The notes under the pieces: generated by a model
The model's input: the letters and a program-made list of their open reading frames with translations, nothing else
Databases searched by the model: none
Told to the model about the DNA's origin: nothing
Virus record (IMG/VR): IMGVR_UViG_3300042868_005134
Coordinates: 319,412-383,411 of that record
Direction: 5' to 3' (one strand)
Length of the DNA: 64,000 nt
Program-made: the position numbers and the translations under genes
In this document: in pieces, positions 30,302 through 59,460 of the stretch
Position numbering within the stretch: the stretch's first letter is position 1
How the letters are laid out: each line of letters starts with the position of its first letter

Positions 30302-30309
30302 AATACTCC

Positions 30310-30912
30310 TTACATTGTTGGGCCGTTGCCGTTTTTAAAACCTACACTGCCACCTTCGGCTTCGATACGAGCAATAACATCTTCGAACAAGATAGGTTCA
30401 AAGTCAGTTTGCTCCACGCAAACACAATGATAACGAACATCGTTCTCATCGCTGTATAAAACTTCGCCAGTTCTAGCATCAACACCGCGAGCCTTCTTCA
30501 CACGGTTGGCGTGAGTGTGTCCGTGAATGTTAACTCCAAAACGACCCATGCTATCACTATGTAACGGGATATGGCTCAAGATCATTCCGTTCATAACATG
30601 ATATGCTCGTAATTCACGGAAGTAAGTCCTATACTCGTCATCACGGAAGATGTCGTGGTTACCGCGGATTAAGACCTTGTCACCGTTTAAGCGACCTAAT
30701 GTCTTTAATGCCTTACGGTTAATGACCGCATCACCTAAGTGATAAACTTTATCAGTTGGCTTAACTTTGGCGTTCCATTTAGCAACCATGGCTTCGTCCA
30801 TTTCCTCTGGACTGTCCCATGGCCTTAACTTGGTAACACCGTCGTTACGTGTGAAGCGACATACACCCATGTGACCAAAGTGTGTGTCGCTTACTAAAAA
30901 TACACTAGGCAT
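30310..30912 (-). CDS. Calcineurin-like phosphoesterase
   Basis: SDTHFGH, HLGD, GNHD, SHIP and HGHTH. Confidence 0.9.
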   Translation of the reverse strand: MPSVFLVSDTHFGHMGVCRFTRNDGVTKLRPWDSPEEMDEAMVAKWNAKVKPTDKVYHLGDAVINRKALKTLGRLNGDKVLIRGNHDIFRDDEYRTYFRELRAYHVMNGMILSHIPLHSDSMGRFGVNIHGHTHANRVKKARGVDARTGEVLYSDENDVRYHCVCVEQTDFEPILFEDVIARIEAEGGSVGFKNGNGPTM

Positions 30913-31537: not shown

Positions 31538-31566
31538 ATTATAACACAGAACTCGCGGTCAGTCAA
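31538..31566 (-). promoter_or_regulatory. Sigma70-type promoter
   Basis: TTGACT-17-TATAAT. Confidence 0.7.
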
Positions 31567-32026
31567 CCGATCTAAAAGTTCTCCAGTCGTCTAAATTAGG
31601 CTTTTCGTCCGAATCGTATGTCCAGCCGAGGGCTTTCATCATACGATGCTTGACCAAAAGATTTGGACTACGGAATCGACCCGTATCTTCAAAACCCAAC
31701 ATGACTCCAAGCTCACAAACCGCACCCGATCTGCAAACGCCGGCGTAGCAATGAACTACAACGTTCATACGGTTAGCCAAAGCGTGTTGTAGCAGTCGAA
31801 CAAGTTCAGCGGCCTGCTCATGACTACACCGCATGGCTTCGTCTAATGCAAAGTCCTTTTCTTCTATGTCTAAAAATTCAAAGTTATGTTGTTCTTTGAA
31901 CTTGTGTGCGGGTACGGGGCGCCAGCTGGCTGGATCAACAATGCTGATCAGCATACTGTTCTCTCCGGCTTCGTGATGGAACCTTGTGGGTATATCAGCA
32001 GCCGCTACGTTTTCAATCCATGGCAT
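31559..32026 (-). CDS. Cys-based (PTP/dual-specificity) phosphatase
   Basis: VHCYAGVCRS CX5R motif. Confidence 0.85.
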   Translation of the reverse strand: MPWIENVAAADIPTRFHHEAGENSMLISIVDPASWRPVPAHKFKEQHNFEFLDIEEKDFALDEAMRCSHEQAAELVRLLQHALANRMNVVVHCYAGVCRSGAVCELGVMLGFEDTGRFRSPNLLVKHRMMKALGWTYDSDEKPNLDDWRTFRSVD

Positions 32027-33090: not shown

Positions 33091-34191
33091 TTAAAAAGCA
33101 TCGTAGTAGTGGAAGTTCTTTTCTTTCACTTTGGTAAGTGTAAGAGCATGACCATCCTTGTTCATGAAGATAAACATGCCACTTTGTGGATCAATCTTTT
33201 GGATTTCAGCTGGCGTAAAACTAGCTTCTTCCCAGTTCCAATCTGCATCTTCCTTGTCGTCGTCTTTGTCAGTCCAGGGTAGGCCTGCGTTAGACACTTT
33301 GAACGACAAGTGGATCTTGCTTTGGAGTGGATTACCTTTCCATTCGCGAGACTCCAGATGCTTTTGTTCAACAGGAATACCTTTGAAGCTCAGTTGAGTT
33401 GAATACTTGTTGCCGTCATCAAATTCTGGTTTGGCATTCAACATCTTCAATGCTTCTTCAGGAGATTCATTGTAGCGATTCATTTCTTCAACTAATGCTT
33501 TCAGCATGTCAAAGTTGAACTGGTTAAACAACATGGCAATTGAGCAAATCTTAGCAATGTGTTCCTTGGCATTCAAGTTGTCCTCACAGTACTCGATGAT
33601 AAAGTCCTGTGTCAAGCCTGTGTAGTCCAGCATGTAGTAGATACGACCTGGACGATTACGCATGTGGCTATCCACACGCCACTTGTCGTTACAGGTAATC
33701 ACAAACATTTTCTTGCTGGGGAATACACCGTCCAACAAAGTCAGCATGGCTTCTTGCTCTTGTGCGTCGTAGACTTTTTCAAACTCGTCAAACAACACAA
33801 CACATGGTTGCTCGATAGCCTGAATCAAGGCATTGAACTTATCACCGGTCCACGCATTGTTAATAACAATGGTAGGATGGCCTTGATTGGCTGCATGAAT
33901 TGACAAGGCTTTTGCCAGCAAACTTTTGCCGCTACCTTTCTCACCAGTAAGCATTACGCCAGTGCTGGCACTACGATCCATGAATGTATTAAAAATACGA
34001 TTTGTATTTTTGTCTAAGTCGCCGTACCGCTTGCCTTTGATCTCAAACGAATCAATTTGTTCAAGATACAACTCACCACTCATTGGATTTTCTTTAATGG
34101 TAAAATTAGCCGCTGGTAGTGCCTCGTGTAGGTCCATGGCTTCTTTTGATGTTACACGAAACGAGATTCCTGATTTTAAAAAATATGACAT
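33091..34191 (-). CDS. AAA+ ATPase
   Basis: GEKGSGKS Walker A, VLFDEFEK Walker B and NRPGR arginine finger. Confidence 0.9.
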   Translation of the reverse strand: MSYFLKSGISFRVTSKEAMDLHEALPAANFTIKENPMSGELYLEQIDSFEIKGKRYGDLDKNTNRIFNTFMDRSASTGVMLTGEKGSGKSLLAKALSIHAANQGHPTIVINNAWTGDKFNALIQAIEQPCVVLFDEFEKVYDAQEQEAMLTLLDGVFPSKKMFVITCNDKWRVDSHMRNRPGRIYYMLDYTGLTQDFIIEYCEDNLNAKEHIAKICSIAMLFNQFNFDMLKALVEEMNRYNESPEEALKMLNAKPEFDDGNKYSTQLSFKGIPVEQKHLESREWKGNPLQSKIHLSFKVSNAGLPWTDKDDDKEDADWNWEEASFTPAEIQKIDPQSGMFIFMNKDGHALTLTKVKEKNFHYYDAF

Positions 34192-34324: not shown

Positions 34325-35740
34325 TTACAGCTTGTAACGATCACTCATTACAGTCTTAAGCATGATGCCTTCTGGAGTGAACTGATCCAAGTCAGCGGCT
34401 AGCAAGCTAGTCATTATACTTGGGCTGAATCCACTTACCAATGCGGCACCACTCTTGTCAGCCTTAACAGGCACGTTGTCTGAACTGTTTAGGTTCCAGA
34501 AAACAACTTGTGGCATGCTGTAGCCTGCGGCTTCGAACTTGCGTTCGATCATTTCCATTGCGCTGTCGTCGTGCTTGGCGCATTGGTCAAACTGCATGTC
34601 ACTCAAGATCAGCAACATGGCTGGCATGTCGCTGGCTGGTACTGAACCCTTAACCGCTACGTCTAGAATCTTGTTCATAGCCGCGTTTAGGTTAGTGCTC
34701 ATGTCCCAATCACTCTTGCTCATTTGAGCAACCTTGTCAACAATGTTACCCTTTAGAGTAACAAGTTCTGGCTTGCTAGAGAAAGTCAAGAAAGTGTCCT
34801 TGAACACACCCTTGTTCTTGTCTGCTAGGTACAGGCCCAAGCTGATTGAAACATCCATACAAGTCACATTAGTGTTCTTTCCTGCTGGGCAAGACATAGA
34901 ACCGCTAACGTCTACGATTGGCATGATGCTGGCATCTCCCACATAGTTTGGCAAAGCATCCCACTGTGCCACGATGTGGTCAGTGGCTGTCTTGTCCAAA
35001 ATTGCACGGTTGTAGCTTCCGATAACACCCTTCAACACGTCATGTGGGAAGATTGCGCTGGCGTTAACCTTGACAGTCTTGTCACCACTTACCAACTTGG
35101 CCACATACTCAGCGAATGCTGGTGTGTGACGGCTGAATGCCTTCTTGTAGTTGCGTGAAGCAACACTTGGCACGTGACTGAAGTTGATGTTGTCCCAGTC
35201 GTTGGCACACATTTGTGTTTCCACAACTGTGGTCATTCCCACTAAACTCTTACGATACTGCTTTGGAGTCATTCCAAAGAATGCTCGTACTTCAGCCGCA
35301 ATCTTGCCCTTACGAGGAGTCCACTTTGCGGCCAGACCGTTACGGGCACGTAGGGCATCGCCCAACATGGTATAAGCGGCTGACTTCAAGTCAGGGTTAG
35401 TGAAGACAAAGATGTCATCCCAACGGCCAACTTCAGGGATCTTGCGTAGCAAAGCCAAAGCGGCGTCTGGGTCACGCTTTTCTAGATGTACTAGAATGTC
35501 GCGGAACAATTGACGTTCACCTGCACCACCACGGACATCACGTGCCCATTGTGCGATGCGTAGTGCTACGTCACTGTTTTCTACATAAGCGGCAGTGAAG
35601 TCGCCTACAATGTTCTTACCACGGCTTGCGCCGATCTTGTAGAACAGGTCCACAGTGGCCTTGGCTGTGCTCTTACGTGCCTTCATGCCATTGGCAGTAC
35701 GGGCTTCTTGGTTTGCTATTGCTGTTACAAATGCGTTCAT
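34325..35740 (-). CDS. TROVE/Ro60-like protein with C-terminal vWA domain (DUF2828-like)
   Basis: ARDVRGGAGER, GRWDD and AAKWTPR in the helical region; MIDAS DVSGSM, T, SDMQFD; VFWNL and LVSGFS. Confidence 0.8.
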   Translation of the reverse strand: MNAFVTAIANQEARTANGMKARKSTAKATVDLFYKIGASRGKNIVGDFTAAYVENSDVALRIAQWARDVRGGAGERQLFRDILVHLEKRDPDAALALLRKIPEVGRWDDIFVFTNPDLKSAAYTMLGDALRARNGLAAKWTPRKGKIAAEVRAFFGMTPKQYRKSLVGMTTVVETQMCANDWDNINFSHVPSVASRNYKKAFSRHTPAFAEYVAKLVSGDKTVKVNASAIFPHDVLKGVIGSYNRAILDKTATDHIVAQWDALPNYVGDASIMPIVDVSGSMSCPAGKNTNVTCMDVSISLGLYLADKNKGVFKDTFLTFSSKPELVTLKGNIVDKVAQMSKSDWDMSTNLNAAMNKILDVAVKGSVPASDMPAMLLILSDMQFDQCAKHDDSAMEMIERKFEAAGYSMPQVVFWNLNSSDNVPVKADKSGAALVSGFSPSIMTSLLAADLDQFTPEGIMLKTVMSDRYKL

Positions 35741-35752
35741 TTTATTACCTCA

Positions 35753-35807
35753 CAGAATGTGTTTTTTTTCGATATGCGTGAAAATTTAAAGTTGCTGTTA
35801 ACATTCT
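35753..35807 (-). ncRNA. ACAGCAA-stem element 1, in the 5' UTR of the Ro60-like gene
   Basis: AGAATGT-TA-ACAGCAA...ACATTCTG immediately before the SD GAGG. Confidence 0.6.
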
Positions 35808-35817
35808 AAAACTTTAA

Positions 35818-36058
35818 CAGGATGATCGTGCCAATTTGTTTAGTATTCTGGTCTGACCAATTACGGCACTCAGACCCTATCAACATTCATGTTGACTATT
35901 CACACTCGGCTTTCTGTAGTGAACACATAGTATGTCTTTCCATACTGTCGTCTATTCCATCTGCGTACATGGTATTTCACATGTATAAACTTTTCAGTCC
36001 ACCCTTACGGGGCACATTCTATAGCATTAAGCGTTAGTTTAAATTGCTGTAGTCATCC
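35818..36058 (-). ncRNA. ACAGCAA-stem element 2 (Y RNA-like, about 240 nt)
   Basis: GGATGACTACAGCAA...TCATCCTG closing several hairpins. Confidence 0.65.
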
Positions 36059-36066
36059 AAATATAA

Positions 36067-36236
36067 CAGGATCGTTTTCTACTTTTTGTTTTTATCGAGG
36101 AGACTTATCGAAACTCCTCTATCTTCACTGTCCTTGCTTGCGCATTGTCTTTAACCTTCAAAGCCCCGAAAGGCTCCAGCTAATAACAGGGTAAGTGAAG
36201 CAATCCATAGTAATATGTAGTTGCTGTACCGATCCT
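36067..36236 (-). ncRNA. ACAGCAA-stem element 3 (Y RNA-like, about 170 nt)
   Basis: AGGATCGGTACAGCAA...CGATCCTG. Confidence 0.65.
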
Positions 36237-37079: not shown

Positions 37080-37196
37080 CAGGATAGGCTTTGCCTTATT
37101 TTTTATTTAAAACTTGACAAAGCGAACAAGTTCGTCCGGGTCGCCCCAGACCTTTGATACGGTTATTCACCGTTAGTGGTTTGCTGTCTCTATCCT
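37080..37196 (-). ncRNA. ACAGCAA-stem element 4
   Basis: AGGATAGAGACAGCAA...CTATCCTG. Confidence 0.65.
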
Positions 37197-37282: not shown

Positions 37283-37465
37283 TTACTTATTTGTTGCTGT
37301 CTGTATATTATAATTGATTTGACTTTGTTTGTCAAGTCTTTCAAATTCTTCATCTTCAAGTTTGGCTTCTTCTAGACGCCTAGGATCAGGCTTTCGAAAA
37401 ATAGTATCATAATTCGAACCAAATGCTTTCAAATCTGTTGGACGTTGTTTACTGCCCTTACTCAT
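37283..37465 (-). CDS. Small hypothetical protein
   Basis: MSKGSKQRP...NYDTIF; AGGAG RBS. Confidence 0.55.
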   Translation of the reverse strand: MSKGSKQRPTDLKAFGSNYDTIFRKPDPRRLEEAKLEDEEFERLDKQSQINYNIQTATNK

Positions 37466-39523: not shown

Positions 39524-39608
39524 TGGTGGAGATTACTGGGATCGAACCAGTCGTGCCCGAAGGCGGCGGATTTACAGTCCACTGCATCACCATTGATGCT
39601 TCATCTCC
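39524..39608 (-). tRNA. tRNA-Tyr(GTA)
   Basis: Long variable arm, CTGTAAA loop, CCA. Confidence 0.93.
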
Positions 39609-39808: not shown

Positions 39809-39837
39809 ATTATAGCGTCTTCTGAGGTTGCTGTCAA
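39809..39837 (-). promoter_or_regulatory. Consensus sigma70 promoter driving the downstream tRNA block
   Basis: TTGACA-17-TATAAT. Confidence 0.88.
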
Positions 39838-42244: not shown

Positions 42245-42363
42245 CAGGATACGTTTTTTACGAAGGGCATGGAGCCCTTTGCTCAACCGCTGAGCGAATC
42301 TGCCATAAGGCAAATGTTGGAATCGAACCAACGTGTCATAAATGACTTTGCTGTGCGTATCCT
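42245..42363 (-). ncRNA. ACAGCAA-stem element 5: YrlA-like RNA carrying a circularly permuted tRNA cloverleaf
   Basis: AGGATACGCACAGCAA...CGTATCCTG enclosing, in order, a T-arm, a loop-closed acceptor stem, a D-arm and an anticodon arm (CTCCATG). Confidence 0.8.
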
Positions 42364-43245: not shown

Positions 43246-43307
43246 CAGGATAGCATTTTTTGGCTTTTTTTACAGAAAAGATTTTTTTGATTTGCTGTTG
43301 CTATCCT
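43246..43307 (-). ncRNA. ACAGCAA-stem element 7 displaying a Tyr-type anticodon stem-loop
   Basis: AGGATAGCAACAGCAA...TGCTATCCTG with CTTTT-CTGTAAA-AAAAG. Confidence 0.7.
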
Positions 43308-43311
43308 AAAC

Positions 43312-43401
43312 TGGCAGTGAGTAAGGGATTCGAACCCTTGGGCCCCTAGCGGAGCCGACAGTTTAGCAAACTATTGGGTTAAGCCACTCCCCCAACTCAC
43401 T
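43312..43401 (-). tRNA. tRNA-Ser(GCT)
   Basis: Long variable arm, G73, CCA. Confidence 0.9.
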
Positions 43402-43406
43402 ATATA

Positions 43407-43562
43407 GGTTTTCCCGGCGACCAACTATCTTTCTTAAGGACTCGCTGGCTTGTCTCGTGTGAAAGAGTTTATACAGACCTTGTACAATTCTACTGGCGTG
43501 TCATGCTCAAGAAATAGGGCACTAGAATACAAGGGACTCATCTCAACGTCTAGCTGGGAAAC
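43407..43562 (-). ncRNA. Unassigned rod-like RNA with a possible pseudoknot
   Basis: TTTCCCAGC/GCCGGGAAA and CCTTGTA..TTCTA/TAGAA..TACAAGG stems; loop TTCTTGAG complementary to CTTAAGAA. Confidence 0.5.
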
Positions 43563-43563
43563 T

Positions 43564-43655
43564 TGGCGGAAGACGGAGGAGTCGAACCCCATCCCATTTC
43601 TGAGAACCCAGTTTTCAAGGCTGGTCGGCGCACCAACGCACCTGCATCATCTTCC
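43564..43655 (-). tRNA. tRNA-Ser(TGA) with 8/4 fold and Sec-like D-arm
   Basis: GGAAGATG/CGTCTTCC 8-bp acceptor, 4-bp T-stem, 6-bp D-stem with 4-nt loop, G73, CCA. Confidence 0.75.
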
Positions 43656-43661
43656 ATAACT

Positions 43662-43736
43662 TGGTGCTCCCTCACGGACTCGAACCGCAATAACCGGACT
43701 ACAAAACCGGTATAATAGCCTTTATATTAAAGGAGC
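43662..43736 (-). tRNA. tRNA-Thr(TGT)
   Basis: Cloverleaf, CCA. Confidence 0.85.
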
Positions 43737-43741
43737 AAATT

Positions 43742-43816
43742 TGGCGCCCACATATGGAATCGAACCACAATCCCCGGTTTCGTAAACCAGTATATTATCC
43801 ATTATACTATGCGGGC
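43742..43816 (-). tRNA. tRNA-Arg(ACG)
   Basis: Cloverleaf, CCA. Confidence 0.9.
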
Positions 43817-43821
43817 AAATT

Positions 43822-43896
43822 TGGTGGTAATAGTAGGATTTGAACCTACACCTTGCTCCGTATGAAGGAGGTGCACTACCGTTATGCTATATTACC
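43822..43896 (-). tRNA. tRNA with CAT anticodon (Met or Ile2)
   Basis: Cloverleaf, TTCATAC loop, CCA. Confidence 0.85.
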
Positions 43897-43991
43897 ATAT
43901 AGAAACACACTAGAGTTTTACGATAAACTACGCTCCTGAGTTTCTGCCCAAGAGCTCATAGGTCTGCCTATGTTTCTAATGTGTTTTTATA

Positions 43992-44066
43992 TGGTAGGGG
44001 CACAGGGAATCGAACCCTGATAGACCGGTTAAAAGCCGGATATTCTAGCCGTTGAATTATACCCCC
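43992..44066 (-). tRNA. tRNA-Lys(TTT)
   Basis: Cloverleaf, CTTTTAA loop, CCA. Confidence 0.9.
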
Positions 44067-44069
44067 ATA

Positions 44070-44145
44070 TGGTCCACAGCGTCAGATTCGAACTGACACC
44101 TCATCGGTTAAGAGCCGAGTACGCTACCGTTAACGCCAGCTGTGG
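44070..44145 (-). tRNA. tRNA-Lys(CTT)
   Basis: Cloverleaf, CCA. Confidence 0.9.
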
Positions 44146-44230
44146 ATGGATCGTAAATATTTTCTTTTACGTGCCATCCAGGACCATACGGGATCCGGGA
44201 TGACACTACAGTTTACCTGTACGTTTCATG

Positions 44231-44359
44231 TCATTCTCCTTTGTTGATATTTCTCTTTTGTGCTTGGCGTTCTGATTTCCAGAACACTCGTTTCCAATCT
44301 TTCAAATGCTTCCACCATTGTGGAGGCGCAGTTAGGTTACCTTTTTTGACATTTGCCAT
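44231..44359 (-). CDS. Small basic Trp-rich protein (42 aa)
   Basis: MANVKKGNLTAPPQWWKHLKDWKRVFWKSERQ...; AAGGA RBS. Confidence 0.55.
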   Translation of the reverse strand: MANVKKGNLTAPPQWWKHLKDWKRVFWKSERQAQKRNINKGE

Positions 44360-44377
44360 AGGATTTCCTTTATAAAA

Positions 44378-44433
44378 CAGGATGCTTATTTTTCAATTAA
44401 AAGTTGAATTTTTGAATTTGCTGTTCGCATCCT
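44378..44433 (-). ncRNA. ACAGCAA-stem element 8 displaying a Lys(UUU)-type anticodon stem-loop
   Basis: AGGATGCGAACAGCAA...GCATCCTG with TTCAA-CTTTTAA-TTGAA. Confidence 0.7.
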
Positions 44434-44437
44434 AAAA

Positions 44438-44513
44438 TGGTACACCCTGTTGGAATCGAACCAACTTCAACGGCTCTTCAGACCGCCGCTATGACCACAT
44501 CAGCTAAAGGTGC
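44438..44513 (-). tRNA. tRNA-Phe(GAA)
   Basis: Cloverleaf, CCA. Confidence 0.9.
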
Positions 44514-44521
44514 ATTATACT

Positions 44522-44597
44522 TGGTCTCCCTACCAGGATTCGAACCTGGACCACACGGCCCCAAACCGTGTACGCAACCTGATAACGCTTTAGAGAG
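44522..44597 (-). tRNA. tRNA-Pro(TGG)
   Basis: Cloverleaf, CCA. Confidence 0.88.
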
Positions 44598-44604
44598 ATA
44601 AAAT

Positions 44605-44679
44605 TGGTGGAGGCCGAGGGAATCGAACCCTTCTAGTCACGATGCTTGCAAGGCAACGCCGTAGCCCACTACTGCCCCC
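44605..44679 (-). tRNA. Atypical tRNA-Ala(TGC) with 4-nt D-loop
   Basis: G3:U70, GTAG-TGGG-CTAC D-arm, CTTGCAA loop, CCA. Confidence 0.75.
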
Positions 44680-44748
44680 AATTACAAAGCATACTATTCT
44701 AACTCGTCAAAAGAGTCTGCGTTATACGTCTTTAGTATACTTTGTAAT

Positions 44749-44826
44749 TGGCTGTCCGACTAGGGATCGAACCTAGCTCATTCTTCGTTAACAGCGAAGC
44801 GCCTACACCATGCTTGCTCTCGGACA
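44749..44826 (-). tRNA. tRNA-Asn(GTT)
   Basis: Cloverleaf, CCA. Confidence 0.88.
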
Positions 44827-44833
44827 ATAAAAT

Positions 44834-44909
44834 TGGCGCCATGGACGGGACTCGAACCCGCCTGGTACGGATAGACAATCCGCTGCCCTACCCCGAGGAC
44901 TACCATGGC
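44834..44909 (-). tRNA. tRNA-Asp(GTC)
   Basis: Cloverleaf, G73, CCA. Confidence 0.88.
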
Positions 44910-44913
44910 ATGT

Positions 44914-44988
44914 TGGTATCGCGTACGGGGATCGAACCCGCCTGAGTAAGTTGAAAGCCTACGGACCTCACCAGAAGTCAAACGCGAT
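44914..44988 (-). tRNA. tRNA-Glu(TTC)
   Basis: Cloverleaf, CCA. Confidence 0.85.
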
Positions 44989-44997
44989 GTAATAAAA

Positions 44998-45055
44998 CAG
45001 GATAGCATCTTTTTTCCATTAAAAGTGAAATTAGAATTTTTGCTGTTGCTATCCT
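44998..45055 (-). ncRNA. ACAGCAA-stem element 9 displaying a Lys(UUU)-type anticodon stem-loop
   Basis: AGGATAGCAACAGCAA...TGCTATCCTG with TTTCA-CTTTTAA-TGGAA. Confidence 0.7.
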
Positions 45056-45060
45056 AAAAT

Positions 45061-45148
45061 TGGTGGAGGCTGATGGAATCGAACCACTTGACAGCCACCC
45101 TGCTTAATATGTCTACCGGGTTACAGCCGGCAACAGGGAACAACCTCC
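45061..45148 (-). tRNA. D-armless tRNA-Tyr(GTA)-like RNA
   Basis: 8-bp acceptor, GCCGG-CTGTAAC-CCGGT arm, T-arm and CCA; D-arm replaced by TTCCCTGTT. Confidence 0.65.
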
Positions 45149-45406
45149 AATTTGTTAACACACTCACGACCGGTAATTACCAATCCATAAGCAAACTATG
45201 TTCACTTATAAAGAATGTGTATATTAAAAGCCACTAGCAGGAAGAACTATGTTCCACTAGCCTCCAAGGACTAGCCCAACACCAATTGCTTTTAATATGA
45301 CAGATTTTTCGCTCTAGAAGAAGAGTTTCATCCTTGCCACCGCCCGTTTGCCCATGTTTTAAGTGCGGGCCAGGACCTCGTTTCCTGTATGTTCACACTT
45401 TGCGGT

Positions 45407-45777: not shown

Positions 45778-45834
45778 TTTGTTTCTCTTTAAAACCTTGT
45801 TTACTTAAACAGCACCATTGCTGTCTATGTGTTA

Positions 45835-46049
45835 ATTATAACGCCTTTCAGCGTCCCTGTCAACAACTTTTGGAATCTTTCTTTGTTGTATTTTTACAAC
45901 ACTCGCAGACTACATTGTTTGCTAACTTGTTTCTATTGTACTACTAATTAGTCTCTGTGTCAACAACTTTTTGTCTTTTTGGACAAATTGTTTTAACAGC
46001 GAATCTTTAACAGTCTTTCTATTGTATGTTTATTTAGTCTCTTTGTCAA
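45835..46049 (-). promoter_or_regulatory. Three tandem sigma70 promoters driving the leader and tRNA array
   Basis: TTGACA-17-TATAAT (45835-45863) and TTGACA-17-TACAAT (45935-45963, 46021-46049). Confidence 0.85.
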
Positions 46050-46118: not shown

Positions 46119-47144
46119 CTAGATTACATGTTTAGTTACCATAATTTCGTCAACTGTTAGACACTGTGATCGTCTACATATAGTTGGAATTGTGTTGAAA
46201 ACTATTTCATCGTTGAACACATTGCCAATCTTGCCATCGTTCTTACAAATGCCAAAGTGCATGTCGCCGTTGGCATCTATAGCAAGTTTTTTCATTCCTA
46301 CATTACAACTCCAGCCTTTGAACTTGTTTAAGTCTTTCATTATAATAGAGTATGCACTTGCCTGTGTAGTTTTAATTATGCCATCTTCTTCTACAGTTAA
46401 GTTTATCTTAAAATTTTTTCGATTGTTAGTGGGTGCTGCGTTTTTACGCTCATCCTCTATTGATTTAATAATAGCTTTTTCGTCTTCGGAAAAATAATCA
46501 AGAGTTAAATCAGACTTTTGTGTGTAATCTTCAAGGTGTCTACTTGTTTGGAATGGCAAATTAATGTGCTGGGTAGTAGTGTTTACTAATGGGAATATAA
46601 TAAGTTTGTTAATGCCAATCGAGTGCGGTTTTAACTTTTCTTCTAACACATTCACTCTATCGAACAGCGTAGGCACCAGCATGGCCCGTACTTCAACTTT
46701 GCCGCCATTTTCTTTTAGACGCACTGCAAGATTAACAAATTTTTCAATATCTGCGGTTTCTGGATGAAAACTAAGAAATATGTTAACAGATTTTAAAGCT
46801 TCGCTACAACGCTCGTACATCTTTGCGGGCATACTACCATTAGTAAAAATAAAAATCTTAAACTTGTGTTCTACTAATCGTTGTAAGAATAACTCAAAAT
46901 TTGGTATGAGAAAAGGTTCGCCGCCAGTTAGTACTACTAACACAGTTTTATCTTCCGGCACTGCTGCCTTTATCTTGTCCGATACTGCCATTAAGTCTTC
47001 GACTTTTGGCATTGTGTTAACATCTATAGTTCTGTGATTGTAAGGCTCGCAATAAGAACAGTCGTAATTACACATATCAAGTGGCTTCCAATGTACAATG
47101 TAATCAGTTAACCAATTGTCTTTTTCAATTCTTAGGAGATTCAT
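46119..47144 (-). CDS. Radical SAM protein with C-terminal Cys-rich (SPASM/twitch-like) region
   Basis: CNYDCSYC, TGGEP, TNGS, SFH and C...G...C...C..C. Confidence 0.88.
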   Translation of the reverse strand: MNLLRIEKDNWLTDYIVHWKPLDMCNYDCSYCEPYNHRTIDVNTMPKVEDLMAVSDKIKAAVPEDKTVLVVLTGGEPFLIPNFELFLQRLVEHKFKIFIFTNGSMPAKMYERCSEALKSVNIFLSFHPETADIEKFVNLAVRLKENGGKVEVRAMLVPTLFDRVNVLEEKLKPHSIGINKLIIFPLVNTTTQHINLPFQTSRHLEDYTQKSDLTLDYFSEDEKAIIKSIEDERKNAAPTNNRKNFKINLTVEEDGIIKTTQASAYSIIMKDLNKFKGWSCNVGMKKLAIDANGDMHFGICKNDGKIGNVFNDEIVFNTIPTICRRSQCLTVDEIMVTKHVI

Positions 47145-47160
47145 ATTTTGTAGCATAAAA

Positions 47161-47187
47161 AACAATGTGGCCGAAGCCACATTGTTT
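47161..47187 (-). terminator. Intrinsic terminator
   Basis: AACAATGTGGC-TTCG-GCCACATTGTT followed by a U-tract. Confidence 0.8.
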
Positions 47188-47203
47188 ATAAATCAATTTG
47201 TGT

Positions 47204-47797
47204 TTAGATTGATTCAATCCAATCTGGTATGTGATTTAAAACGTTCTTGTTAATTCCTAACAGTTCGTTAACTTCATTGGGCAGTACAGGAACTTCCATC
47301 ATTTCAGGATGCCACACTAAACCCCAGATTGGTTTAGTCTTATGTTTAAACCCTTCGATGTTGCCATCTAAGTCTACTGCAATTGCGTCATAATCAGTAC
47401 CTACAGTAACAATGTTAGAACCGTGGAAGCTATTAACTAACACATTATGTCCTTCCATTGTTACTACATGTTCTGTTCCTCTATGATTTTCAATATCATC
47501 ACACACTGCTCCAGATATCTCTGCTAGAAAAAATGCCCCATGACAAATACCAAGAATAGGAATATTGTGTTCTATAGCATAGTTATATAACTTTAACTCA
47601 GTGTACAAACGTGTCATACTAGAATTCCCGCCACTTAATATTAACATATCAAATTCGTAAATCTTACCAGTATCCACATTTGGTATGGGCATAACATCAT
47701 GTTTCTTCAAGAAGGTATGCCATACATGACTTAAACAATCATGTGTGAGACCGCTGTTTCCAACAATCTCTTCACGTTGACTAATTGCAATTTTCAA
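47204..47797 (-). CDS. Class I glutamine amidotransferase (peptidase C26/PuuD-like)
   Basis: LSGG, PILGICHG, VNSFH and WHPE. Confidence 0.88.
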   Translation of the reverse strand: MKIAISQREEIVGNSGLTHDCLSHVWHTFLKKHDVMPIPNVDTGKIYEFDMLILSGGNSSMTRLYTELKLYNYAIEHNIPILGICHGAFFLAEISGAVCDDIENHRGTEHVVTMEGHNVLVNSFHGSNIVTVGTDYDAIAVDLDGNIEGFKHKTKPIWGLVWHPEMMEVPVLPNEVNELLGINKNVLNHIPDWIESI

Positions 47798-53073: not shown

Positions 53074-54534
53074 TTAAATATATGAAATTTTTGTTTTGTT
53101 AAAAAATATGCCGTACACTATAACCGATAATGTTATTACAAATAAGGTAAAACTTATCGGTCGATAAAATACATGATCCCATGCGTACAATGTATTGTAT
53201 TGTAGTAGCATCTTTTCCAATTGATCACTGAGTGCAAAACCCACAATTAAGGCGGCACGGCTCAGTTTGAGATATTTAATTACTATGCCTAATATACAAC
53301 AAATTGCGAACATGAGGTAATCTTCCCAGTAGCCTGTATATTGTACACTACTCCATAACAACAAAGCTATAATAGGCCAGAAGTAATATTTAAAAGGCAT
53401 AGCCATAAATTTTATTGCGTATCGTATAAACAATATTGAAATAATAAACGTTAGTGTCATTGACAACATGTAACTATAAGTCAACATGTTGAAAAATTTA
53501 GCATCGGTTAATAACGTAGGAGTACCTAGTTCAAGTCCCACTAGTACAAACAAACTCATTAATACAACTTCAAACGGAGCTCCTGGAACTCCAAACAATA
53601 TAGTAGGCACATAGCTTGTTGCTTTTTGTGCGTTGTTTGCGCCTTCGCTACCCACGACTCCTTTGATATTACCTTCACCAAATGGAATTTTTTCATTCTT
53701 ATTTAGGGCAACTGTTTGACCGTATGCTAACCAATCTGCGATACTGCCGCCGATGCCCGGTATAACACCTACTATAGCACCAATAGCGCCGCCGCGTAAC
53801 CCGTCCCATTTATGTTGCCAACTATCAACGAACCCTTGCCAAATTTGTTGCCATGGCCGCTCAGAATTTGTTACAGGTGCTTCGTACTGTTTTTTGTATG
53901 CTTCAACTAATTCCGGAAATGCTAATATTCCAGCTAACACCGGAATTAGTTGTATACCGTTGGCTAAGTAATCCCAGCCGCCTGTTAGTCTAGAGCTTCC
54001 ACTAATTGGATCGATACCCACAAGTCCAGCAAATATGCCTACAACTAGGGCAATGATTCCCCTGAACCAATATTCACTGTTGATAAAACACACACAACTG
54101 AATGCCAATAATAAAAACATCAACATTTCAGGTATACCAAATTTTAATATCAACGTAGCGTATAATGGCAAAAATACAAATACCATGGCACCCCAAATAA
54201 ATCCGTTTACTGTGGAGGTAACAATACTGGCACTGAGAGCTCTGCCAGCTTCGCCACGTTTTGCCATAGGAAAACCATCTACCATGGTGGCGGCACTGCC
54301 GCCCGCACCTGGTATGTTTAATACTACACTGCTAAAGCTGTCTCCGATTGTGCTGGCCACAACAATAGCTGTGGAAAAAACTACCAGTGTGTAAGGATCT
54401 GCTCTGAACACATCTAAAAAACTAAAGATTGTAATTAATGCAGTAGCAGTACCTGCAACAGGCACAATACCAAAGAAAAAGCCATACAAGGTACCTGATA
54501 GTAACCAGGGCAAATATTGTACTACTAGATCCAT
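53074..54534 (-). CDS. tctA: Tripartite tricarboxylate transporter permease TctA
   Basis: LNIPG...DGFPMAKRGEAGRAL, PGIGG and EGANNA...LFGVPG; about 12 TM segments. Confidence 0.88.
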   Translation of the reverse strand: MDLVVQYLPWLLSGTLYGFFFGIVPVAGTATALITIFSFLDVFRADPYTLVVFSTAIVVASTIGDSFSSVVLNIPGAGGSAATMVDGFPMAKRGEAGRALSASIVTSTVNGFIWGAMVFVFLPLYATLILKFGIPEMLMFLLLAFSCVCFINSEYWFRGIIALVVGIFAGLVGIDPISGSSRLTGGWDYLANGIQLIPVLAGILAFPELVEAYKKQYEAPVTNSERPWQQIWQGFVDSWQHKWDGLRGGAIGAIVGVIPGIGGSIADWLAYGQTVALNKNEKIPFGEGNIKGVVGSEGANNAQKATSYVPTILFGVPGAPFEVVLMSLFVLVGLELGTPTLLTDAKFFNMLTYSYMLSMTLTFIISILFIRYAIKFMAMPFKYYFWPIIALLLWSSVQYTGYWEDYLMFAICCILGIVIKYLKLSRAALIVGFALSDQLEKMLLQYNTLYAWDHVFYRPISFTLFVITLSVIVYGIFFNKTKISYI

Positions 54535-54598: not shown

Positions 54599-55450
54599 TT
54601 AAATACCCATTTCTTTGCGAATCTTCGTAGCACTAATAGCATGTGTTGTATCATCAAAGGTCTCCTGTTCAATTTTGTAACCGACGTCTCGTCCGTAGGT
54701 AATATTTACAATATTAGGTACAACTTGAATCTCGTATTGTCCTTGATATATAGGATCGAGGTCTCTTTTAATTAATGATTTCACTTGGTTAACTGCAAAC
54801 GGATTGCTATTATTCCATCCTTGGCAATCTCGGATCTGAATTACCACTTGACCTGTTTTGGCAATGGCACGTTCAAACAAGGCGCGATGCCCGGCGTGCC
54901 AAGGTTGCCAACGTCCCAACATCTGTACAGTTTCTTTCTGCCAATCGAACCGTGATCTGCGCTTGTTATCTAGAATATGTGTGCCCACAAACTCTACCCA
55001 CTTTTCAGCATTCTGTTCAATAATTCTGAAATCGTATTGTTCAGGTGGAACAAAGGCTTTGTTAGTGTCTTCAAATCGGCCTTGTTCAATAGTGTCCATC
55101 CATATAGTCCAATCAGCTTTATAGTTGTTTCGCATTTCAACTAACGGTGCTACAAAATCACAAATAACAAAATCACCTGTACACTTAACAGCAAATTCGA
55201 ACATACGAATGCTTTGACGAATCCTTCCCTCTTTGCTAAAATCCCAATCGTTGAATTTTTTGCGTACATCGTCGGCGTTGAACCAATCTACTTTAGCTTC
55301 CCAATGTAGCGGAGCGTTTTCAAATTGAGCTAATCTTTCCAAGGGCATTTGCGATACTGTGCTGTTGTCTTCTAAGTATTTTTTTAATCGCTCAGCAAAG
55401 TAAGTTTTGCCAGATCCTGGTAATCCCATTATTAATATTCGTTGTGTCAT
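54599..55450 (-). CDS. Adenylylsulfate kinase-like domain fused to an HxGH nucleotidyltransferase-like domain
   Basis: MGLPGSGKT, NADDVR and FSKEGR; second domain GRWQPWHAGH...ISATKIR. Confidence 0.8.
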   Translation of the reverse strand: MTQRILIMGLPGSGKTYFAERLKKYLEDNSTVSQMPLERLAQFENAPLHWEAKVDWFNADDVRKKFNDWDFSKEGRIRQSIRMFEFAVKCTGDFVICDFVAPLVEMRNNYKADWTIWMDTIEQGRFEDTNKAFVPPEQYDFRIIEQNAEKWVEFVGTHILDNKRRSRFDWQKETVQMLGRWQPWHAGHRALFERAIAKTGQVVIQIRDCQGWNNSNPFAVNQVKSLIKRDLDPIYQGQYEIQVVPNIVNITYGRDVGYKIEQETFDDTTHAISATKIRKEMGI

Positions 55451-56064: not shown

Positions 56065-56137
56065 GTTTTTATTTCCTTTAAAAATGTCTGTTTGACATAT
56101 AGCTAGTATATAGCAGATCTAGAAGTGCGGCCAAAGA

Positions 56138-56496
56138 AAATGGCGCCAAAGGCGCCATTTACTGGTTGTTTATTTTACAAGGTAAGTCCTACCCCGGAGT
56201 TGCAGTTTCTTAGGCTGCTAGTTCAAAACGCTCGTCGTTTAAGGCGACGTGTGTTTCAAAGTACTCGAATGTATTTGCGTTTGCATTTACGGATTTTGCT
56301 TGATTTAGAGTCATCGCCTACTCAGTTGCCGTCTCTATTATCTCACCCTGTCGAAACCATGGCAGGCCCATCATAAAAACACAATACCAAAGTAAATTTA
56401 CACGGAATACCAAAGTAAATTTATGCTTTTATGGTGGACCTGGCGGGAGTCGAACCCGCGTCCAGAATGCCTTCACTTTGAAGGAATTACAACTAT
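56138..56496 (-). ncRNA. ssrA: Permuted two-piece tmRNA
   Basis: Acceptor piece (GCGGGTTCGACTCCCGCCAGGTCCACCA, ending 56432) precedes the coding piece (GGGCCTG...GGTTTCGAC, from 56369). G3:U70 pair; tag ANANTFEYFETHVALNDERFELAA at 56284-56210; terminator at 56138-56160. Confidence 0.9.
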
Positions 56497-56502
56497 ACGC
56501 TT

Positions 56503-56531
56503 ATTATAGCGCATTGTATTTAGTGTGTCAA
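56503..56531 (-). promoter_or_regulatory. Consensus sigma70 promoter of the tmRNA
   Basis: TTGACA-17-TATAAT. Confidence 0.85.
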
Positions 56532-56576
56532 TTAGTTTGGCAAACAATAAATACAACGAAAGAGCCGGGAGCGAAT

Positions 56577-57396: not shown

Positions 57397-59460
57397 TTAC
57401 TTCGAAGTAGCACGGTAAGTACCGTCCCAGTCTGCTGGAAGATCTCTGGAGCGCATTTCAGCAATACGTTCAATCCACAGTTCGTAGTAGTGATCCATAT
57501 TACCATAGAACTCGCCAGCAAGTTCTTGACACAGTTCAATGGCCTTGTCCCAGTTCTGTTCTCGATAGTATTGTAGCATTAGTTCGTGATGCTCTCTAGC
57601 ACTATGCCATTCGTCTGACACATTCTCATCTGGATTGTAGAACACTGTAAAAATATTAACACCTATGTTCTTGCCTTTAACAGCAATACAATCTAAGGGA
57701 ATAGTAAAGTACGCATCGCCTACTCTACTCTGTGTGGCTTCACTAATGATAATTAGCACACCGTAGTTCTTGGTCTGCCCTTCCAATCGAGCAGTTAAAC
57801 TAACACTGTCACCTAGTACATCATAGCCAAAGCGATCCTTACTACCAATGTTGCCAATCAGAGTAGATCCTGTGTTGATACCTATTCCACATCCTACTTT
57901 TGGCTTGCCTTCTTTCTCTAATTCAATGTTAAACAACTCAACAGCATGTAACATTTCTAAGCCTGTACGTACACCTGCCAGTACATGATCAGGATCTTGC
58001 GCCTCTTGAATAGGAGCACCATGAACATGTAAACTGGCGTCACCGATGAACTTGATCAAACAACCGTTGTTGCGTAGTATAGGTTCAGCAATGGCAGTCA
58101 TGTAACGATTCATAGTATGTGTAAATGCCACAACGTCATCTCCGTAGGTCTCACCTAAGCCAGTGAAGTTACGCATGTCACTCATCATGACAGTAAGTTC
58201 TTTCTTCTCTCCACCTAGTTTAATAAAGCTAGGATCTTTTTGTAAGCGTTCAACAATGACAGGGTTTACGTAACTTCCAAATTGTTTCTTGATCTGACTC
58301 TTTTGTAAGAACTCGCTTACAAACTTGACACCATAGGCATGTAGGGCGACCAAAGTTGTGCCAACTGCAAAGGCAGTAGCATCGAATAAGAATAGAAAAT
58401 TACTGTAAGCATAGATGCTGCCAGCAACACCACCACCGACCAATACAATGACTGCTGCCAATCCAACATATGTCCACCTTGTTAAAAATAATAATAGAAT
58501 ACCTACTAAAGCAATAGCTAGTATTTCTAAATCGTCTGCGTATCCAGGGCGCTGTATATTTGTCTGCGTAATCATAGTACCTATTACACTGGCTTGAGCA
58601 TCATGTGGCCACACTTCGCCACGGGCTGTCGCCACAGGATTGGCAAGGCCAGCTGCACTTACACCCACAATAACAATGGCACCATCGAAACTCTTTGGCA
58701 AAGCAACCAAGCTGTGTTCCGTAGGCTTCTTGCTCCAGTCAACCCAAATGCGGCCTAACTCATCCGTGTTTATTCTTCCAAATTTTGGCACACGTAGAGC
58801 TTCAACGCCTTGCTCGCCTATCTTAACTTGTACTCTAGGATCTTTGGCGGCCACACGTAATGTTTCCAATGCTAGTGCAGGATGTAAATTTCCTTGGCTA
58901 GCAATCACTAAAGGCATACGGCGCATCACGCCATCTACTTCGGGAAATGTGTTAACTATGCCCACGCCAGCAGCCACTTCTTCGAGTGCGGGAACATTAC
59001 TAATCAATCCAGGATACTCGACTACTAGGCCTTCGGGATCTTTTCCAACCACTTGAACAGGACTGCCAAATGATTTATTCTTTTGTGCGGTATGACCAAG
59101 TGTAGGTAATACCACTGGCAGACCTAGCATGGTTCTTGCTAAGGTCTGATCCTGTTTAAATCGGTCTGCTTCAGGCATCAAAATATTAAACACCACTAGG
59201 CCGGCATCATGGGCATACAAATCTTTTATGATGGTTGCGTAAATATCTCTAGGAAATGGAAACTGACCATACTTGTCCAAACTGGCTTCGTCAATGTTTA
59301 CTGTGTGTACTGGGATGTCGACAGCTGGTTGGTTAACAATCAGCTGATCAAAATAACGTAACCTTACACTTTCTACAAATACAGGATCTGCTATTCTTAT
59401 ACTTAATATAAGTACCAATGTTAGTAGAGCAGTCCACGGTGATAATAATATTTTTTTCAT
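57397..59460 (-). CDS. CHASE2-domain class III adenylate/guanylate cyclase
   Basis: NIDEASLDKYGQFPFPR and DGVMRR (CHASE2); TM bundle; SDMRNFT, KFIGDA, GIGINTG and GDSVSLTARLE. Confidence 0.92.
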   Translation of the reverse strand: MKKILLSPWTALLTLVLILSIRIADPVFVESVRLRYFDQLIVNQPAVDIPVHTVNIDEASLDKYGQFPFPRDIYATIIKDLYAHDAGLVVFNILMPEADRFKQDQTLARTMLGLPVVLPTLGHTAQKNKSFGSPVQVVGKDPEGLVVEYPGLISNVPALEEVAAGVGIVNTFPEVDGVMRRMPLVIASQGNLHPALALETLRVAAKDPRVQVKIGEQGVEALRVPKFGRINTDELGRIWVDWSKKPTEHSLVALPKSFDGAIVIVGVSAAGLANPVATARGEVWPHDAQASVIGTMITQTNIQRPGYADDLEILAIALVGILLLFLTRWTYVGLAAVIVLVGGGVAGSIYAYSNFLFLFDATAFAVGTTLVALHAYGVKFVSEFLQKSQIKKQFGSYVNPVIVERLQKDPSFIKLGGEKKELTVMMSDMRNFTGLGETYGDDVVAFTHTMNRYMTAIAEPILRNNGCLIKFIGDASLHVHGAPIQEAQDPDHVLAGVRTGLEMLHAVELFNIELEKEGKPKVGCGIGINTGSTLIGNIGSKDRFGYDVLGDSVSLTARLEGQTKNYGVLIIISEATQSRVGDAYFTIPLDCIAVKGKNIGVNIFTVFYNPDENVSDEWHSAREHHELMLQYYREQNWDKAIELCQELAGEFYGNMDHYYELWIERIAEMRSRDLPADWDGTYRATSK

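What the first reader, a model, noticed from the sequence alone, without database searches (positions are those of the whole stretch)
43246..45055. Minimal ACAGCAA RNAs display exact anticodon stem-loops of tRNA-Lys(UUU) and tRNA-Tyr(GUA): candidate decoys for anticodon nucleases
Seen: each of the three shortest elements holds one 5-bp hairpin with a canonical 7-nt loop, flanked by A-rich linkers. They are CTTTT-CTGTAAA-AAAAG (43264-43280), TTCAA-CTTTTAA-TTGAA (44392-44408) and TTTCA-CTTTTAA-TGGAA (45014-45030). The loops are identical to those of this phage's own tRNA-Tyr (39524) and tRNA-Lys (43992). Established: tRNA-Lys(UUU) is the target of PrrC and of PARIS AriB; tRNA-Tyr is targeted by retron Ec78 PtuAB and colicin E5. 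Inference: these are protein-scaffolded anticodon mimics that titrate or report on defence nucleases or modification enzymes.
Basis: partly seen in the sequence, partly recalled or inferred. Interest (0 to 1): 0.85.

Follow-up and report, generated by a model that had tools for sequence, protein, structure and literature searches.

The report
Phage Ro-partner RNAs displaying anticodon arms
Three ~55-nt RNAs inside a phage tRNA gene array are the smallest members of a large, apparently undescribed family of Y-RNA-like tRNA mimics linked to a Ro60-fold protein; each shows only a tRNA anticodon arm, which may bait host enzymes that attack tRNA anticodons.

Summary
The three elements share one frame. 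It is a 10-bp terminal stem, an invariant single-stranded ACAGCAA, an A-rich linker, a 5-bp hairpin with a 7-nt loop, a second A-rich linker and a UGUU tail. Their loops (CUGUAAA, CUUUUAA, CUUUUAA) are identical to those of this phage's tRNA-Tyr and tRNA-Lys(UUU).

Across 280 related phage loci, 99 of 184 distinct minimal elements carry a hairpin whose loop equals a real phage tRNA anticodon loop; shuffles give 2.7. The hairpin covaries. One stem hosts several different anticodon loops, and loop flanks follow tRNA identity. Larger members are circularly permuted tRNA mimics that keep a full anticodon arm, which canonical YrlA lacks.

The adjacent gene (DUF2828+DUF7788) folds like Ro60. Homologues with ACAGCA elements occur in KVP40 and in Felix-O1-like phages. 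The anticodon choice is not explained by base composition: Lys UUU dominates, followed by Tyr, Thr UGU, Ser UGA and Arg UCU.

The identity as a Ro-type RNP cofactor displaying an anticodon arm is well supported. The decoy or bait function against anticodon nucleases is plausible but untested, at about one in three.

The parts
43248..43306 (-). Minimal element E1 (59 nt core). It has the terminal stem GGAUAGCA/UGCUAUCC, ACAGCAA and an anticodon-arm mimic with the Tyr loop CUGUAAA. It lies 5 nt after the CCA end of tRNA-Ser, and its 10-nt UGUUUUUAUU tail abuts tRNA-Ile.
43264..43280 (-). E1 anticodon-stem-loop mimic CUUUU-CUGUAAA-AAAAG. In orthologues the loop is replaced by CUUGAAA (Ser UGA) and others on the same stem.
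44380..44432 (-). Minimal element E2 (53 nt). It lies 5 nt after the CCA end of tRNA-Phe and is followed by a 42-codon ORF.
44392..44408 (-). E2 anticodon-stem-loop mimic UUCAA-CUUUUAA-UUGAA (Lys UUU loop).
45000..45054 (-). Minimal element E3 (55 nt), lying between a tRNA-Tyr-like gene and a tRNA-Glu-like gene that ARAGORN does not call.
45014..45030 (-). E3 anticodon-stem-loop mimic UUUCA-CUUUUAA-UGGAA (Lys UUU loop). Its stem differs from E2 by a compensatory change.
42247..42362 (-). 116-nt family member built as a permuted tRNA mimic: T arm (GUUGG-UUCGAUU-CCAAC), closed acceptor-like hairpin, D-arm-like hairpin, then a 7-nt-loop arm (CUCCAUG). Orthologues carry CUCCAAG or CUCAAAA at that arm.
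37082..37195 (-). 114-nt member with the same terminal frame and a structured insert that is not tRNA-like.
36069..36235 (-). 167-nt member, conserved about 320 nt upstream of the Ro-like gene in relatives.
35820..36058 (-). 239-nt member, ending about 80 nt before the Ro-like start codon in most relatives.
35754..35807 (-). Degenerate minimal element (AGAAUGU...ACAUUCU with ACAGCAA) in the 5' UTR of the Ro-like gene, just before its ribosome-binding site. It is a possible autoregulatory site.
   Evidence: same arrangement in KVP40
34325..35740 (-). Ro60-fold protein (Pfam DUF2828 + DUF7788, i.e. a helical-repeat ring plus a vWA domain with an invariant DxSxS MIDAS motif).
33091..34191 (-). 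AAA+ ATPase directly downstream of the Ro-like gene. It is a possible partner; Pfam records no AAA domain on the neighbouring genes of the divergent loci.
45835..45863 (-). Perfect sigma-70 consensus promoter (12/12) that would drive the tRNA and element array holding E3, E2 and E1.

Best explanation
E1-E3 are small non-coding RNAs. They are co-transcribed with the phage tRNA array and probably released by the tRNA-processing enzymes. They belong to a large phage family of Y-RNA-like RNAs.

The constant part is a 10-bp terminal stem, a single-stranded ACAGCA(A/C) and a UGUU tail. It is probably the handle bound by the neighbouring Ro60-fold protein. The variable part is a tRNA mimic. Full-size members are circularly permuted tRNAs with a closed acceptor end, so they cannot be charged. 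The minimal members keep only the anticodon stem-loop.

The RNP therefore displays an anticodon arm of a defined identity (here Tyr GUA and twice Lys UUU) that cannot decode. I propose that it acts as an anticodon-specific bait for host factors that recognise anticodon loops. The most probable such factors are tRNA-cleaving defence nucleases, which it would sequester, or whose attack it would report.

Shown: the RNA family, its structure, the anticodon-loop identity, the linkage to the Ro-fold gene, and the non-random, fast-changing anticodon repertoire. Inferred: binding by the protein, processing, and the bait function.

My sub-probabilities are about 0.9 for a Ro-type cofactor family, about 0.85 for a selected anticodon-arm mimic, and about 0.3-0.35 for a nuclease bait or decoy.
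For: (1) Frequency. 89 of 184 distinct minimal elements have a CU-NNN-AA loop on a >=4-bp stem; shuffles give 1.8. 99 of 184 have a loop identical to a real phage tRNA anticodon loop. Dinucleotide shuffles give 2.7 and loop-letter shuffles give 4.2.

(2) Loop flanks track tRNA identity: UUGGUAU for Thr GGU, UUUGGGA for Pro, UUGUGGA for His, UUUUGGU for Gln. A is almost absent at position 34 although the inserts are 45% A.

(3) Covariation on an unfitted MAFFT alignment scores 0.381. Shuffled columns give 0.124 (0 of 500 reach the observed value) and slid controls give at most 0.12. Four of the five hairpin pairs show double changes.

(4) One stem hosts many loops. CUUUU/AAAAG carries Tyr, Ser UGA, Ser CGA, Thr GGU and Pro loops. 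UUUGA/UCAAA carries Lys UUU, Lys CUU, Thr UGU and Arg UCU loops. Close relatives differ mostly at positions 34 and 35.

(5) There is a size series: permuted tRNA (110-115 nt), then anticodon arm plus T arm (87-96 nt), then anticodon arm only (50-60 nt).

(6) The neighbouring protein has a Ro60 fold. The model has pLDDT 91, and the top 11 PDB hits are all Ro60/TROVE with TM-scores up to 0.65. 102 of 114 loci have an element within 1.2 kb upstream on the same strand.

(7) Loci fetched by protein alone, at 36-44% identity, carry ACAGCA elements. These include a minimal one with the Ser UGA loop and permuted mimics with Met CAU and Thr GGU loops.

(8) Lys, Thr UGU, Asn, Tyr and Arg UCU make up 26 of 38 distinct stem-loop types; composition predicts 4.5. 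AT-rich Ile and Leu loops, predicted to be commonest, are absent.

(9) These anticodons are known nuclease targets: PARIS AriB cuts Lys UUU, Thr UGU and Asn GUU (PMC12409363); P2 OLD prefers tRNA-Thr UGU (PMC13648713); retron Ec78 is countered by phage tRNA-Tyr (10.1101/2023.03.15.532788).

(10) RNA end-healing candidates lie 4-5 kb away, and a divergent relative has Rnl1 and Rnl2 ligases near the gene.

(11) A Felix-O1-type Ro60-like protein was found to counter a defence system (PMC11482910).
Against: No expression, processing, binding or cleavage data exist for these RNAs.

The hairpins are barely stable alone, and unconstrained folds do not return the exact hairpin for any of the three.

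About 40% of minimal elements have other loops, such as AUUGGA, ACGUUAA or a GCUAA...UAGCG subfamily. In Shigella phage Sf17 the three minimal elements are not anticodon-like.

The one experimental anti-defence result concerns Ppl, a DNA-end exonuclease (PMC12904381).

An unmodified substrate mimic is a weak inhibitor of a nuclease that turns over. AriB also needs D-loop contacts, which a bare anticodon arm lacks (PMC12409363).

The set of 'known targets' was chosen after seeing the data. The host is unknown.
Confidence: 0.4

Rival explanations
1. Tether or adaptor, as in the Ro-Y RNA-PNPase machine. The tRNA-like part recruits a tRNA-handling enzyme to the Ro-like ring for tRNA quality control or repair during infection. 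Candidates are modification enzymes acting at position 37 or 34, RNA ligase or kinase, or an exonuclease. No host defence protein is involved.
For: Y RNAs are known tethers, and YrlA is a substrate of tRNA modification enzymes (PMC4201824; 10.1101/312249). A phage Ro60 with its Y-like RNAs binds host PNPase (PMC12135203). About 90% of the mimic loops have U36-A37 or A36-A37, the contexts of the t6A and i6A modifications; that link rests on my own knowledge. End-healing and ligase genes are nearby.
Against: U or A at position 36 is what the AT-rich composition predicts anyway. General tRNA enzymes would not require a varied, fast-changing set of specific anticodons, nor the strong Lys UUU excess.
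Confidence: 0.25
2. Gate or titrator only. The RNAs regulate the Ro-like protein through the constant handle, by blocking its RNA-binding surface or by feedback on its own mRNA. The anticodon arm is an inherited tRNA remnant that serves merely as a spacer.
For: A handle-only element sits in the 5' UTR of the Ro-like gene here, and in KVP40 it encloses the ribosome-binding site and start codon. Sf17 minimal elements and about 40% of those in this clade lack anticodon-like loops. Gating by Y RNAs is established for Ro60.
Against: A remnant would decay. Instead the 7-nt format, U33, the absence of A34, tRNA-specific flanks and stem pairing are all maintained, while whole loops are exchanged for other valid anticodon loops.
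Confidence: 0.15
3. Processing or termination punctuation of the tRNA operon, with no function for the released RNA.
For: The elements sit 3-5 nt after tRNA CCA ends and about 10 nt before the next tRNA, and they end in a U-run.
Against: None is called terminator-like. Members also lie next to the Ro-like gene outside tRNA arrays. This reading does not explain anticodon-loop identity or the permuted tRNA forms.
Confidence: 0.05
4. Chance hairpins in AT-rich spacers.
For: The sequence is of low complexity and the stems are weak.
Against: 99 observed against 2.7 expected. Covariation is present. 120 chance matches to the same search pattern in cellular genomes give 0 anticodon-like loops.
Confidence: 0.01

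Closest known systems
Bacterial and phage YrlA-type Y RNAs with Ro60/Rsr
   Same: The RNAs are encoded beside a Ro-fold gene on the same strand. Their 5' and 3' ends pair into a stem next to a conserved single-stranded motif. The variable part mimics tRNA as a circularly permuted form with a closed acceptor stem, a T arm and a D arm (PMC4201824; 10.1101/312249).
   Different: The conserved motif is ACAGCA(A/C), not GNCGAAN0-1G/CGAA, and there is no Rfam hit. The permutation leaves a complete anticodon stem-loop, which YrlA lacks. The minimal members keep only that arm. The RNAs are embedded in tRNA arrays. The protein is of the DUF2828/DUF7788 type and gets no Pfam TROVE hit.
Phage tRNAs that rescue infection from anticodon nucleases (T5 tRNA-Lys/Thr/Asn against PARIS; tRNA-Tyr against retron Ec78)
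   Same: The same anticodon identities are prominent, and they are encoded in the same kind of phage tRNA array (PMC12409363; 10.1101/2023.03.15.532788).
   Different: Those are functional, nuclease-resistant tRNAs that replace the cleaved host tRNA. These RNAs have no acceptor end and cannot decode, so any protection would have to come from binding, not replacement.
RNA mimics used as anti-defence (pseudo-ToxI antitoxin RNA, RNA anti-CRISPRs made of solitary repeats); comparison from my own knowledge
   Same: A phage-encoded RNA copies the natural RNA partner or substrate of a host defence protein.
   Different: Here the mimicry is of a tRNA anticodon arm on a Ro-type protein handle, and no target protein has been identified.
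Bas63 gp130 (Ro60-like protein of a Felix-O1-type coliphage)
   Same: It is a Ro60-like protein encoded next to a tRNA array, and Felix-O1-type phages carry homologues of this protein at about 36% identity. It was found experimentally to counter a defence system, and the authors guessed that some 'tRNA genes' are Y RNAs (PMC11482910). The related phage Sf17 carries ACAGCAA elements in its tRNA-array gaps.
   Different: The RNAs were not identified in that work. I did not align gp130 itself. The countered system, Ppl, acts on DNA ends (PMC12904381). The Sf17 minimal elements are not anticodon-like.

Membership tests
Y RNA / YrlA | Encoded close to a Ro60 orthologue on the same strand | tested here: met
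   102 of 114 loci have an element within 1.2 kb upstream on the same strand. The same holds in loci fetched by protein only. E1-E3 themselves lie 7.5-9.3 kb upstream, in the same array.
Y RNA / YrlA | Terminal stem carrying the conserved Ro-binding motif GNCGAAN0-1G (CGAA) | tested here: not met
   The motif here is ACAGCA(A/C). No Rfam family is matched at gathering score, or meaningfully at E <= 10.
Y RNA / YrlA | tRNA-like domain with T arm, closed acceptor stem and D arm, and no anticodon loop | tested here: not met
   Long members have T, acceptor and D arms but also a complete anticodon arm. E1-E3 have only the anticodon arm.
Y RNA / YrlA | Bound by the Ro protein | not testable with these tools
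   This needs co-purification or a gel shift.
Ro60 / TROVE proteins (for the partner gene) | Ring of helical repeats plus a vWA domain with a MIDAS motif | tested here: met
   The model has pLDDT 91. The top 11 PDB matches are all Ro60/TROVE/Rsr, with E from 3e-8 to 8e-6. D277, S279 and S281 are invariant.
Ro60 / TROVE proteins (for the partner gene) | Sequence membership in Pfam TROVE | tested here: not met
   Pfam gives DUF2828 and DUF7788 only. There is no sequence hit to PDB chains.
tRNA | Cloverleaf with a free acceptor end | tested here: not met
   E1-E3 are called neither by ARAGORN nor by the Rfam tRNA model.
tRNA anticodon stem-loop (as a mimic) | 5-bp stem, 7-nt loop, pyrimidine at 32, U33, purine at 37, and a loop identical to a real tRNA loop | tested here: met
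.
Intrinsic terminator | GC-rich hairpin with a short loop followed by a U-run | tested here: not met
   The scan calls none of the elements.
Anti-defence RNA decoy | Binds or is cut by a defence protein and relieves defence | not testable with these tools
   Support is indirect only (PMC11482910).

The most novel reading that the evidence does not exclude
Phages carry a swappable set of anticodon-specific RNA baits, mounted on a Ro-type protein, that neutralise or sense host anticodon nucleases such as the PARIS/OLD, PrrC or PtuAB types. The triplet in each bait would record which tRNA the local hosts attack.
Probability: 0.3. Interest if true: 0.92.

Novelty: new variant of a known kind. Interest (0 to 1): 0.8.

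Why it matters
The result gives a cofactor RNA family to a very large Ro-like protein family. That family has more than 6,000 clusters at 50% identity and homologues in 706 cultured phages, including KVP40 and Felix-O1-type coliphages.

It also shows a tRNA mimic reduced to the anticodon arm, with an anticodon repertoire that differs between close relatives. If the bait idea holds, this would be a new, RNA-based and anticodon-specific counter-defence. It would also explain why Ro-like genes sit beside phage tRNA arrays. Because relatives exist in laboratory phages, the idea can be tested directly.

Tried and rejected
- Rfam, at gathering score and at E <= 10, gave only weak chance-level hits to a Dictyostelium class I RNA model.
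- DNA similarity to cultured phages found only shared tRNAs.
- A sequence search of the protein against PDB chains found nothing. The fold search was needed.
- A literature search for DUF2828 gave nothing relevant.
- NCBIfam and Pfam on about 50 neighbouring ORFs found no RtcB or RNA ligase in the window.
- The pattern scan of cellular genomes returned about the number of matches expected by chance. None has an anticodon-like loop, so I used it as a negative control. One 600-nt MAG contig (L321) looks like a real member.
- A relaxed motif-free stem search in the protein-derived loci was uninformative, because the pattern is its own reverse complement.
- I considered a pseudoknot between AACAG and CUGUU. 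I rejected it on geometry, because no linker is available to cross the 8-bp stem.
- I considered queuosine-insertion (TGT) substrates as the explanation. I rejected this as a general one, because most loops lack U-G-U at positions 33-35.
- I compared the 3' side of the mimic arms with the AriB site UAAUC|A. Some relatives match, but E2 and E3 do not, and the host is unknown, so this is inconclusive.
Full report
**Setting**

The window is phage-like. The minus strand carries 38 tRNA genes called by ARAGORN between 36.3 and 44.9 kb, several more tRNA-like genes seen only by Rfam, and a tmRNA at 56.1 kb. Perfect sigma-70 consensus promoters on the minus strand would drive this array. No cultured phage is close at the DNA level.

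**The observation**

On the minus strand the three elements share one frame:
- UUUA, then a terminal stem GGAU-NNNN.
- ACAGCAA.
- An A-rich linker.
- A 5-bp hairpin with a 7-nt loop.
- A second A-rich linker.
- NNNN-AUCC closing the terminal stem, then UGUUUU.

Their loops equal those of the phage's tRNA-Tyr and tRNA-Lys(UUU). Each element starts 5-6 nt after the CCA end of a tRNA. E1 and E3 end about 10 nt before the next tRNA or tRNA-like gene, and E2 is followed by a short ORF. The tRNA-processing enzymes would therefore release them. This is an inference.

**The family**

The window holds at least eight elements with this frame, from 53 to 239 nt. I collected related DNA in three steps:
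- 80 related loci through the neighbouring protein.
- 200 more through the frame alone, using a pattern that does not constrain the insert.
- 120 pattern matches in cellular genomes. This is about the number expected by chance, and they served as a negative control.

**Is the hairpin an anticodon-arm mimic?**

I tested 184 distinct minimal elements of 70 nt or less.
- 89 have a stem of at least 4 bp closing a CU-NNN-AA loop. Dinucleotide shuffles give 1.8 +/- 1.4, with a maximum of 6.
- ARAGORN found 3,985 tRNAs in the same loci.
- 99 of the 184 elements have a loop identical to one of the 94 common anticodon loops of those tRNAs. Dinucleotide shuffles give 2.7 +/- 1.7. Shuffling only the loop letters of the real hairpins gives 4.2 +/- 2.1.
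- In the cellular-genome control, 0 of 120 matches have such a loop.
- Loops that are not CU..AA follow the flanks of the matching tRNA: UUGGUAU for Thr GGU, UUUGGGA for Pro, UUGUGGA for His and UUUUGGU for Gln.
- A is nearly absent at position 34 (4 of 115), although the inserts are 45% A.
- On a MAFFT alignment that was not fitted to any structure, both helices covary. The score is 0.381, against 0.124 in shuffles (0 of 500 reach it) and at most 0.12 when partners are slid. Four of the five hairpin pairs show changes on both sides.
- One stem carries many different valid loops.
- Among close relatives the differences concentrate at positions 34 and 35. These pairs are not independent, so this is suggestive only.

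**A series of reductions**

Constrained folds show three size classes.
- The 110-115-nt members are circularly permuted tRNA mimics. The usual order is handle, anticodon arm with a real anticodon loop, short variable stretch, T arm, 7-bp acceptor stem closed by a loop, D arm, handle.
- The 87-96-nt members keep the anticodon arm and the T arm.
- The 50-60-nt members keep the anticodon arm only.

The window's 116-nt member has the other order, with the 7-nt-loop arm after the D arm. Canonical YrlA is also a permuted tRNA mimic, but it lacks the anticodon loop (10.1101/312249). In this family the anticodon arm is the part retained throughout the tRNA-like members.

**The protein**

ORF 34325-35740 hits Pfam DUF2828 and DUF7788. 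A model built on 51 diverse sequences has pLDDT 91. Its 11 best PDB matches are all Ro60, TROVE or Rsr structures, over the full length. The vWA MIDAS residues are invariant.

Of 114 loci with the gene start and enough upstream DNA, 102 have an element within 1.2 kb upstream on the same strand.

Loci fetched by protein alone also carry ACAGCA(A/C) next to a terminal stem.
- L401 (42% identity) has four elements upstream of the gene. One is a permuted mimic with the Met CAU loop. One is a minimal element with the Ser UGA loop.
- Homologues exist in 706 cultured phages.
- KVP40 has two long elements in its tRNA region. A handle in the 5' UTR encloses the ribosome-binding site and start codon.
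- Shigella phage Sf17 has four elements in gaps of its tRNA array. One is a permuted mimic with a Thr GGU loop. The three minimal ones are not anticodon-like.

**Function**

The anticodon repertoire is skewed. Lys UUU dominates, with 35 elements on at least 10 distinct stems. Tyr, Thr UGU, Ser UGA, Arg UCU and Lys CUU follow. Base composition predicts Ile UAU and Leu loops as the commonest, yet none is seen among minimal elements. Lys, Thr UGU, Asn, Tyr and Arg UCU together make 26 of 38 distinct types against 4.5 expected. I grouped that set after seeing the data.

Repertoires differ between related genomes.

Several of these tRNAs are known targets of defence nucleases:
- AriB cuts Lys UUU, Thr UGU and Asn GUU (PMC12409363).
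- P2 OLD prefers tRNA-Thr UGU (PMC13648713).
- Retron Ec78 is countered by phage tRNA-Tyr (10.1101/2023.03.15.532788).

A kinase and phosphoesterase pair of the RNA end-healing type lies 4-5 kb away. One divergent relative has Rnl1 and Rnl2 ligases near the gene. A Felix-O1-type Ro60-like protein counters the Ppl system (PMC11482910), but Ppl is described as a DNA-end exonuclease (PMC12904381).

These facts fit an anti-defence bait. They do not prove it. Rivals remain open: an adaptor for tRNA-handling enzymes, or simple gating of the protein.

**Weak points**
- The hairpins are marginally stable.
- About 40% of minimal elements have other loops.
- The host is unknown.
- There are no expression or binding data.

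**Novelty**

Ro60-Y RNA pairs, YrlA tRNA mimicry and phage Ro60 proteins are known. The following are absent from Rfam 15 and from the papers I could search:
- the ACAGCA-handle RNA family;
- its embedding in tRNA arrays;
- the retained anticodon arm;
- the arm-only minimal forms;
- the variable anticodon repertoire.

I file it as a new variant of a known kind.

Noticed in passing
window 35754-35807 (-); L409 8966-9005: A handle-only ACAGCAA element sits in the 5' UTR of the Ro-like gene. In KVP40 the equivalent stem encloses the ribosome-binding site and start codon. This suggests feedback of the protein on its own mRNA.
   Followed up: partly
window 45818-45824 and 37294-37300 (-): ACAGCAA also occurs about 10 nt downstream of the -10 box of two perfect sigma-70 consensus promoters (45863-45835 and 37335-37307). 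It would therefore lie near the 5' end of those primary transcripts. At 39828 the motif overlaps a -35 box.
   Followed up: no
window 45064-45149, 44917-44989, 43568-43655, 39527-39608 (-): These are tRNA-like genes missed by ARAGORN: a second Tyr-like gene (loop CUGUAAC), a Glu UUC-like gene, a Ser UGA-like gene and the tRNA-Tyr. Rfam scores them weakly or as tRNA-Sec-like.
   Followed up: partly
window 44231-44359 (-): A 42-codon, very basic ORF with a ribosome-binding site starts 20 nt after element E2, inside the tRNA array.
   Followed up: no
window 29840-30912 and 31559-32026 (-): An adjacent P-loop kinase (AAA_33) and a metallophosphoesterase, plus a dual-specificity phosphatase, are candidates for RNA end-healing. 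No RNA ligase was found in the window. A divergent relative (L403) has Rnl1 and Rnl2 ligases near its Ro-like gene.
   Followed up: partly
window 56119-56545 (-): A phage-encoded tmRNA matches both the permuted and the betaproteobacterial Rfam models. Its predicted tag peptide ends in ...ERFELAA.
   Followed up: no
window 7145-7699, 46119-47797 (-): A QueD-like PTPS, a radical SAM protein with weak QueE-like hits and a class-I amidotransferase hint at a 7-deazaguanine pathway.
   Followed up: no
window 12104-12778, 15182-15772, 53074-54534, 54599-55450, 57397-59460 (-): The window carries unusual cargo for a phage: a Bax1-I family membrane protein, ClpP, a TctA transporter subunit, a KTI12-like P-loop protein and a CHASE2-nucleotide cyclase.
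   Followed up: no
L166, L188, L117, L133 and others; L321: A subfamily of minimal elements has a conserved insert (GCUAA...GGUUGUCUAGCGACAAA) that is not anticodon-like. One copy sits on a 600-nt contig binned to a Cypionkella MAG.
   Followed up: no
L410 8704-8791; window 35754-35807; L401 1544-1599: Several minimal elements from distant clades share a loop of the type (A/G)CGCAUA or ACGCUAA, with C in place of U33. This may be a second conserved loop class.
   Followed up: no
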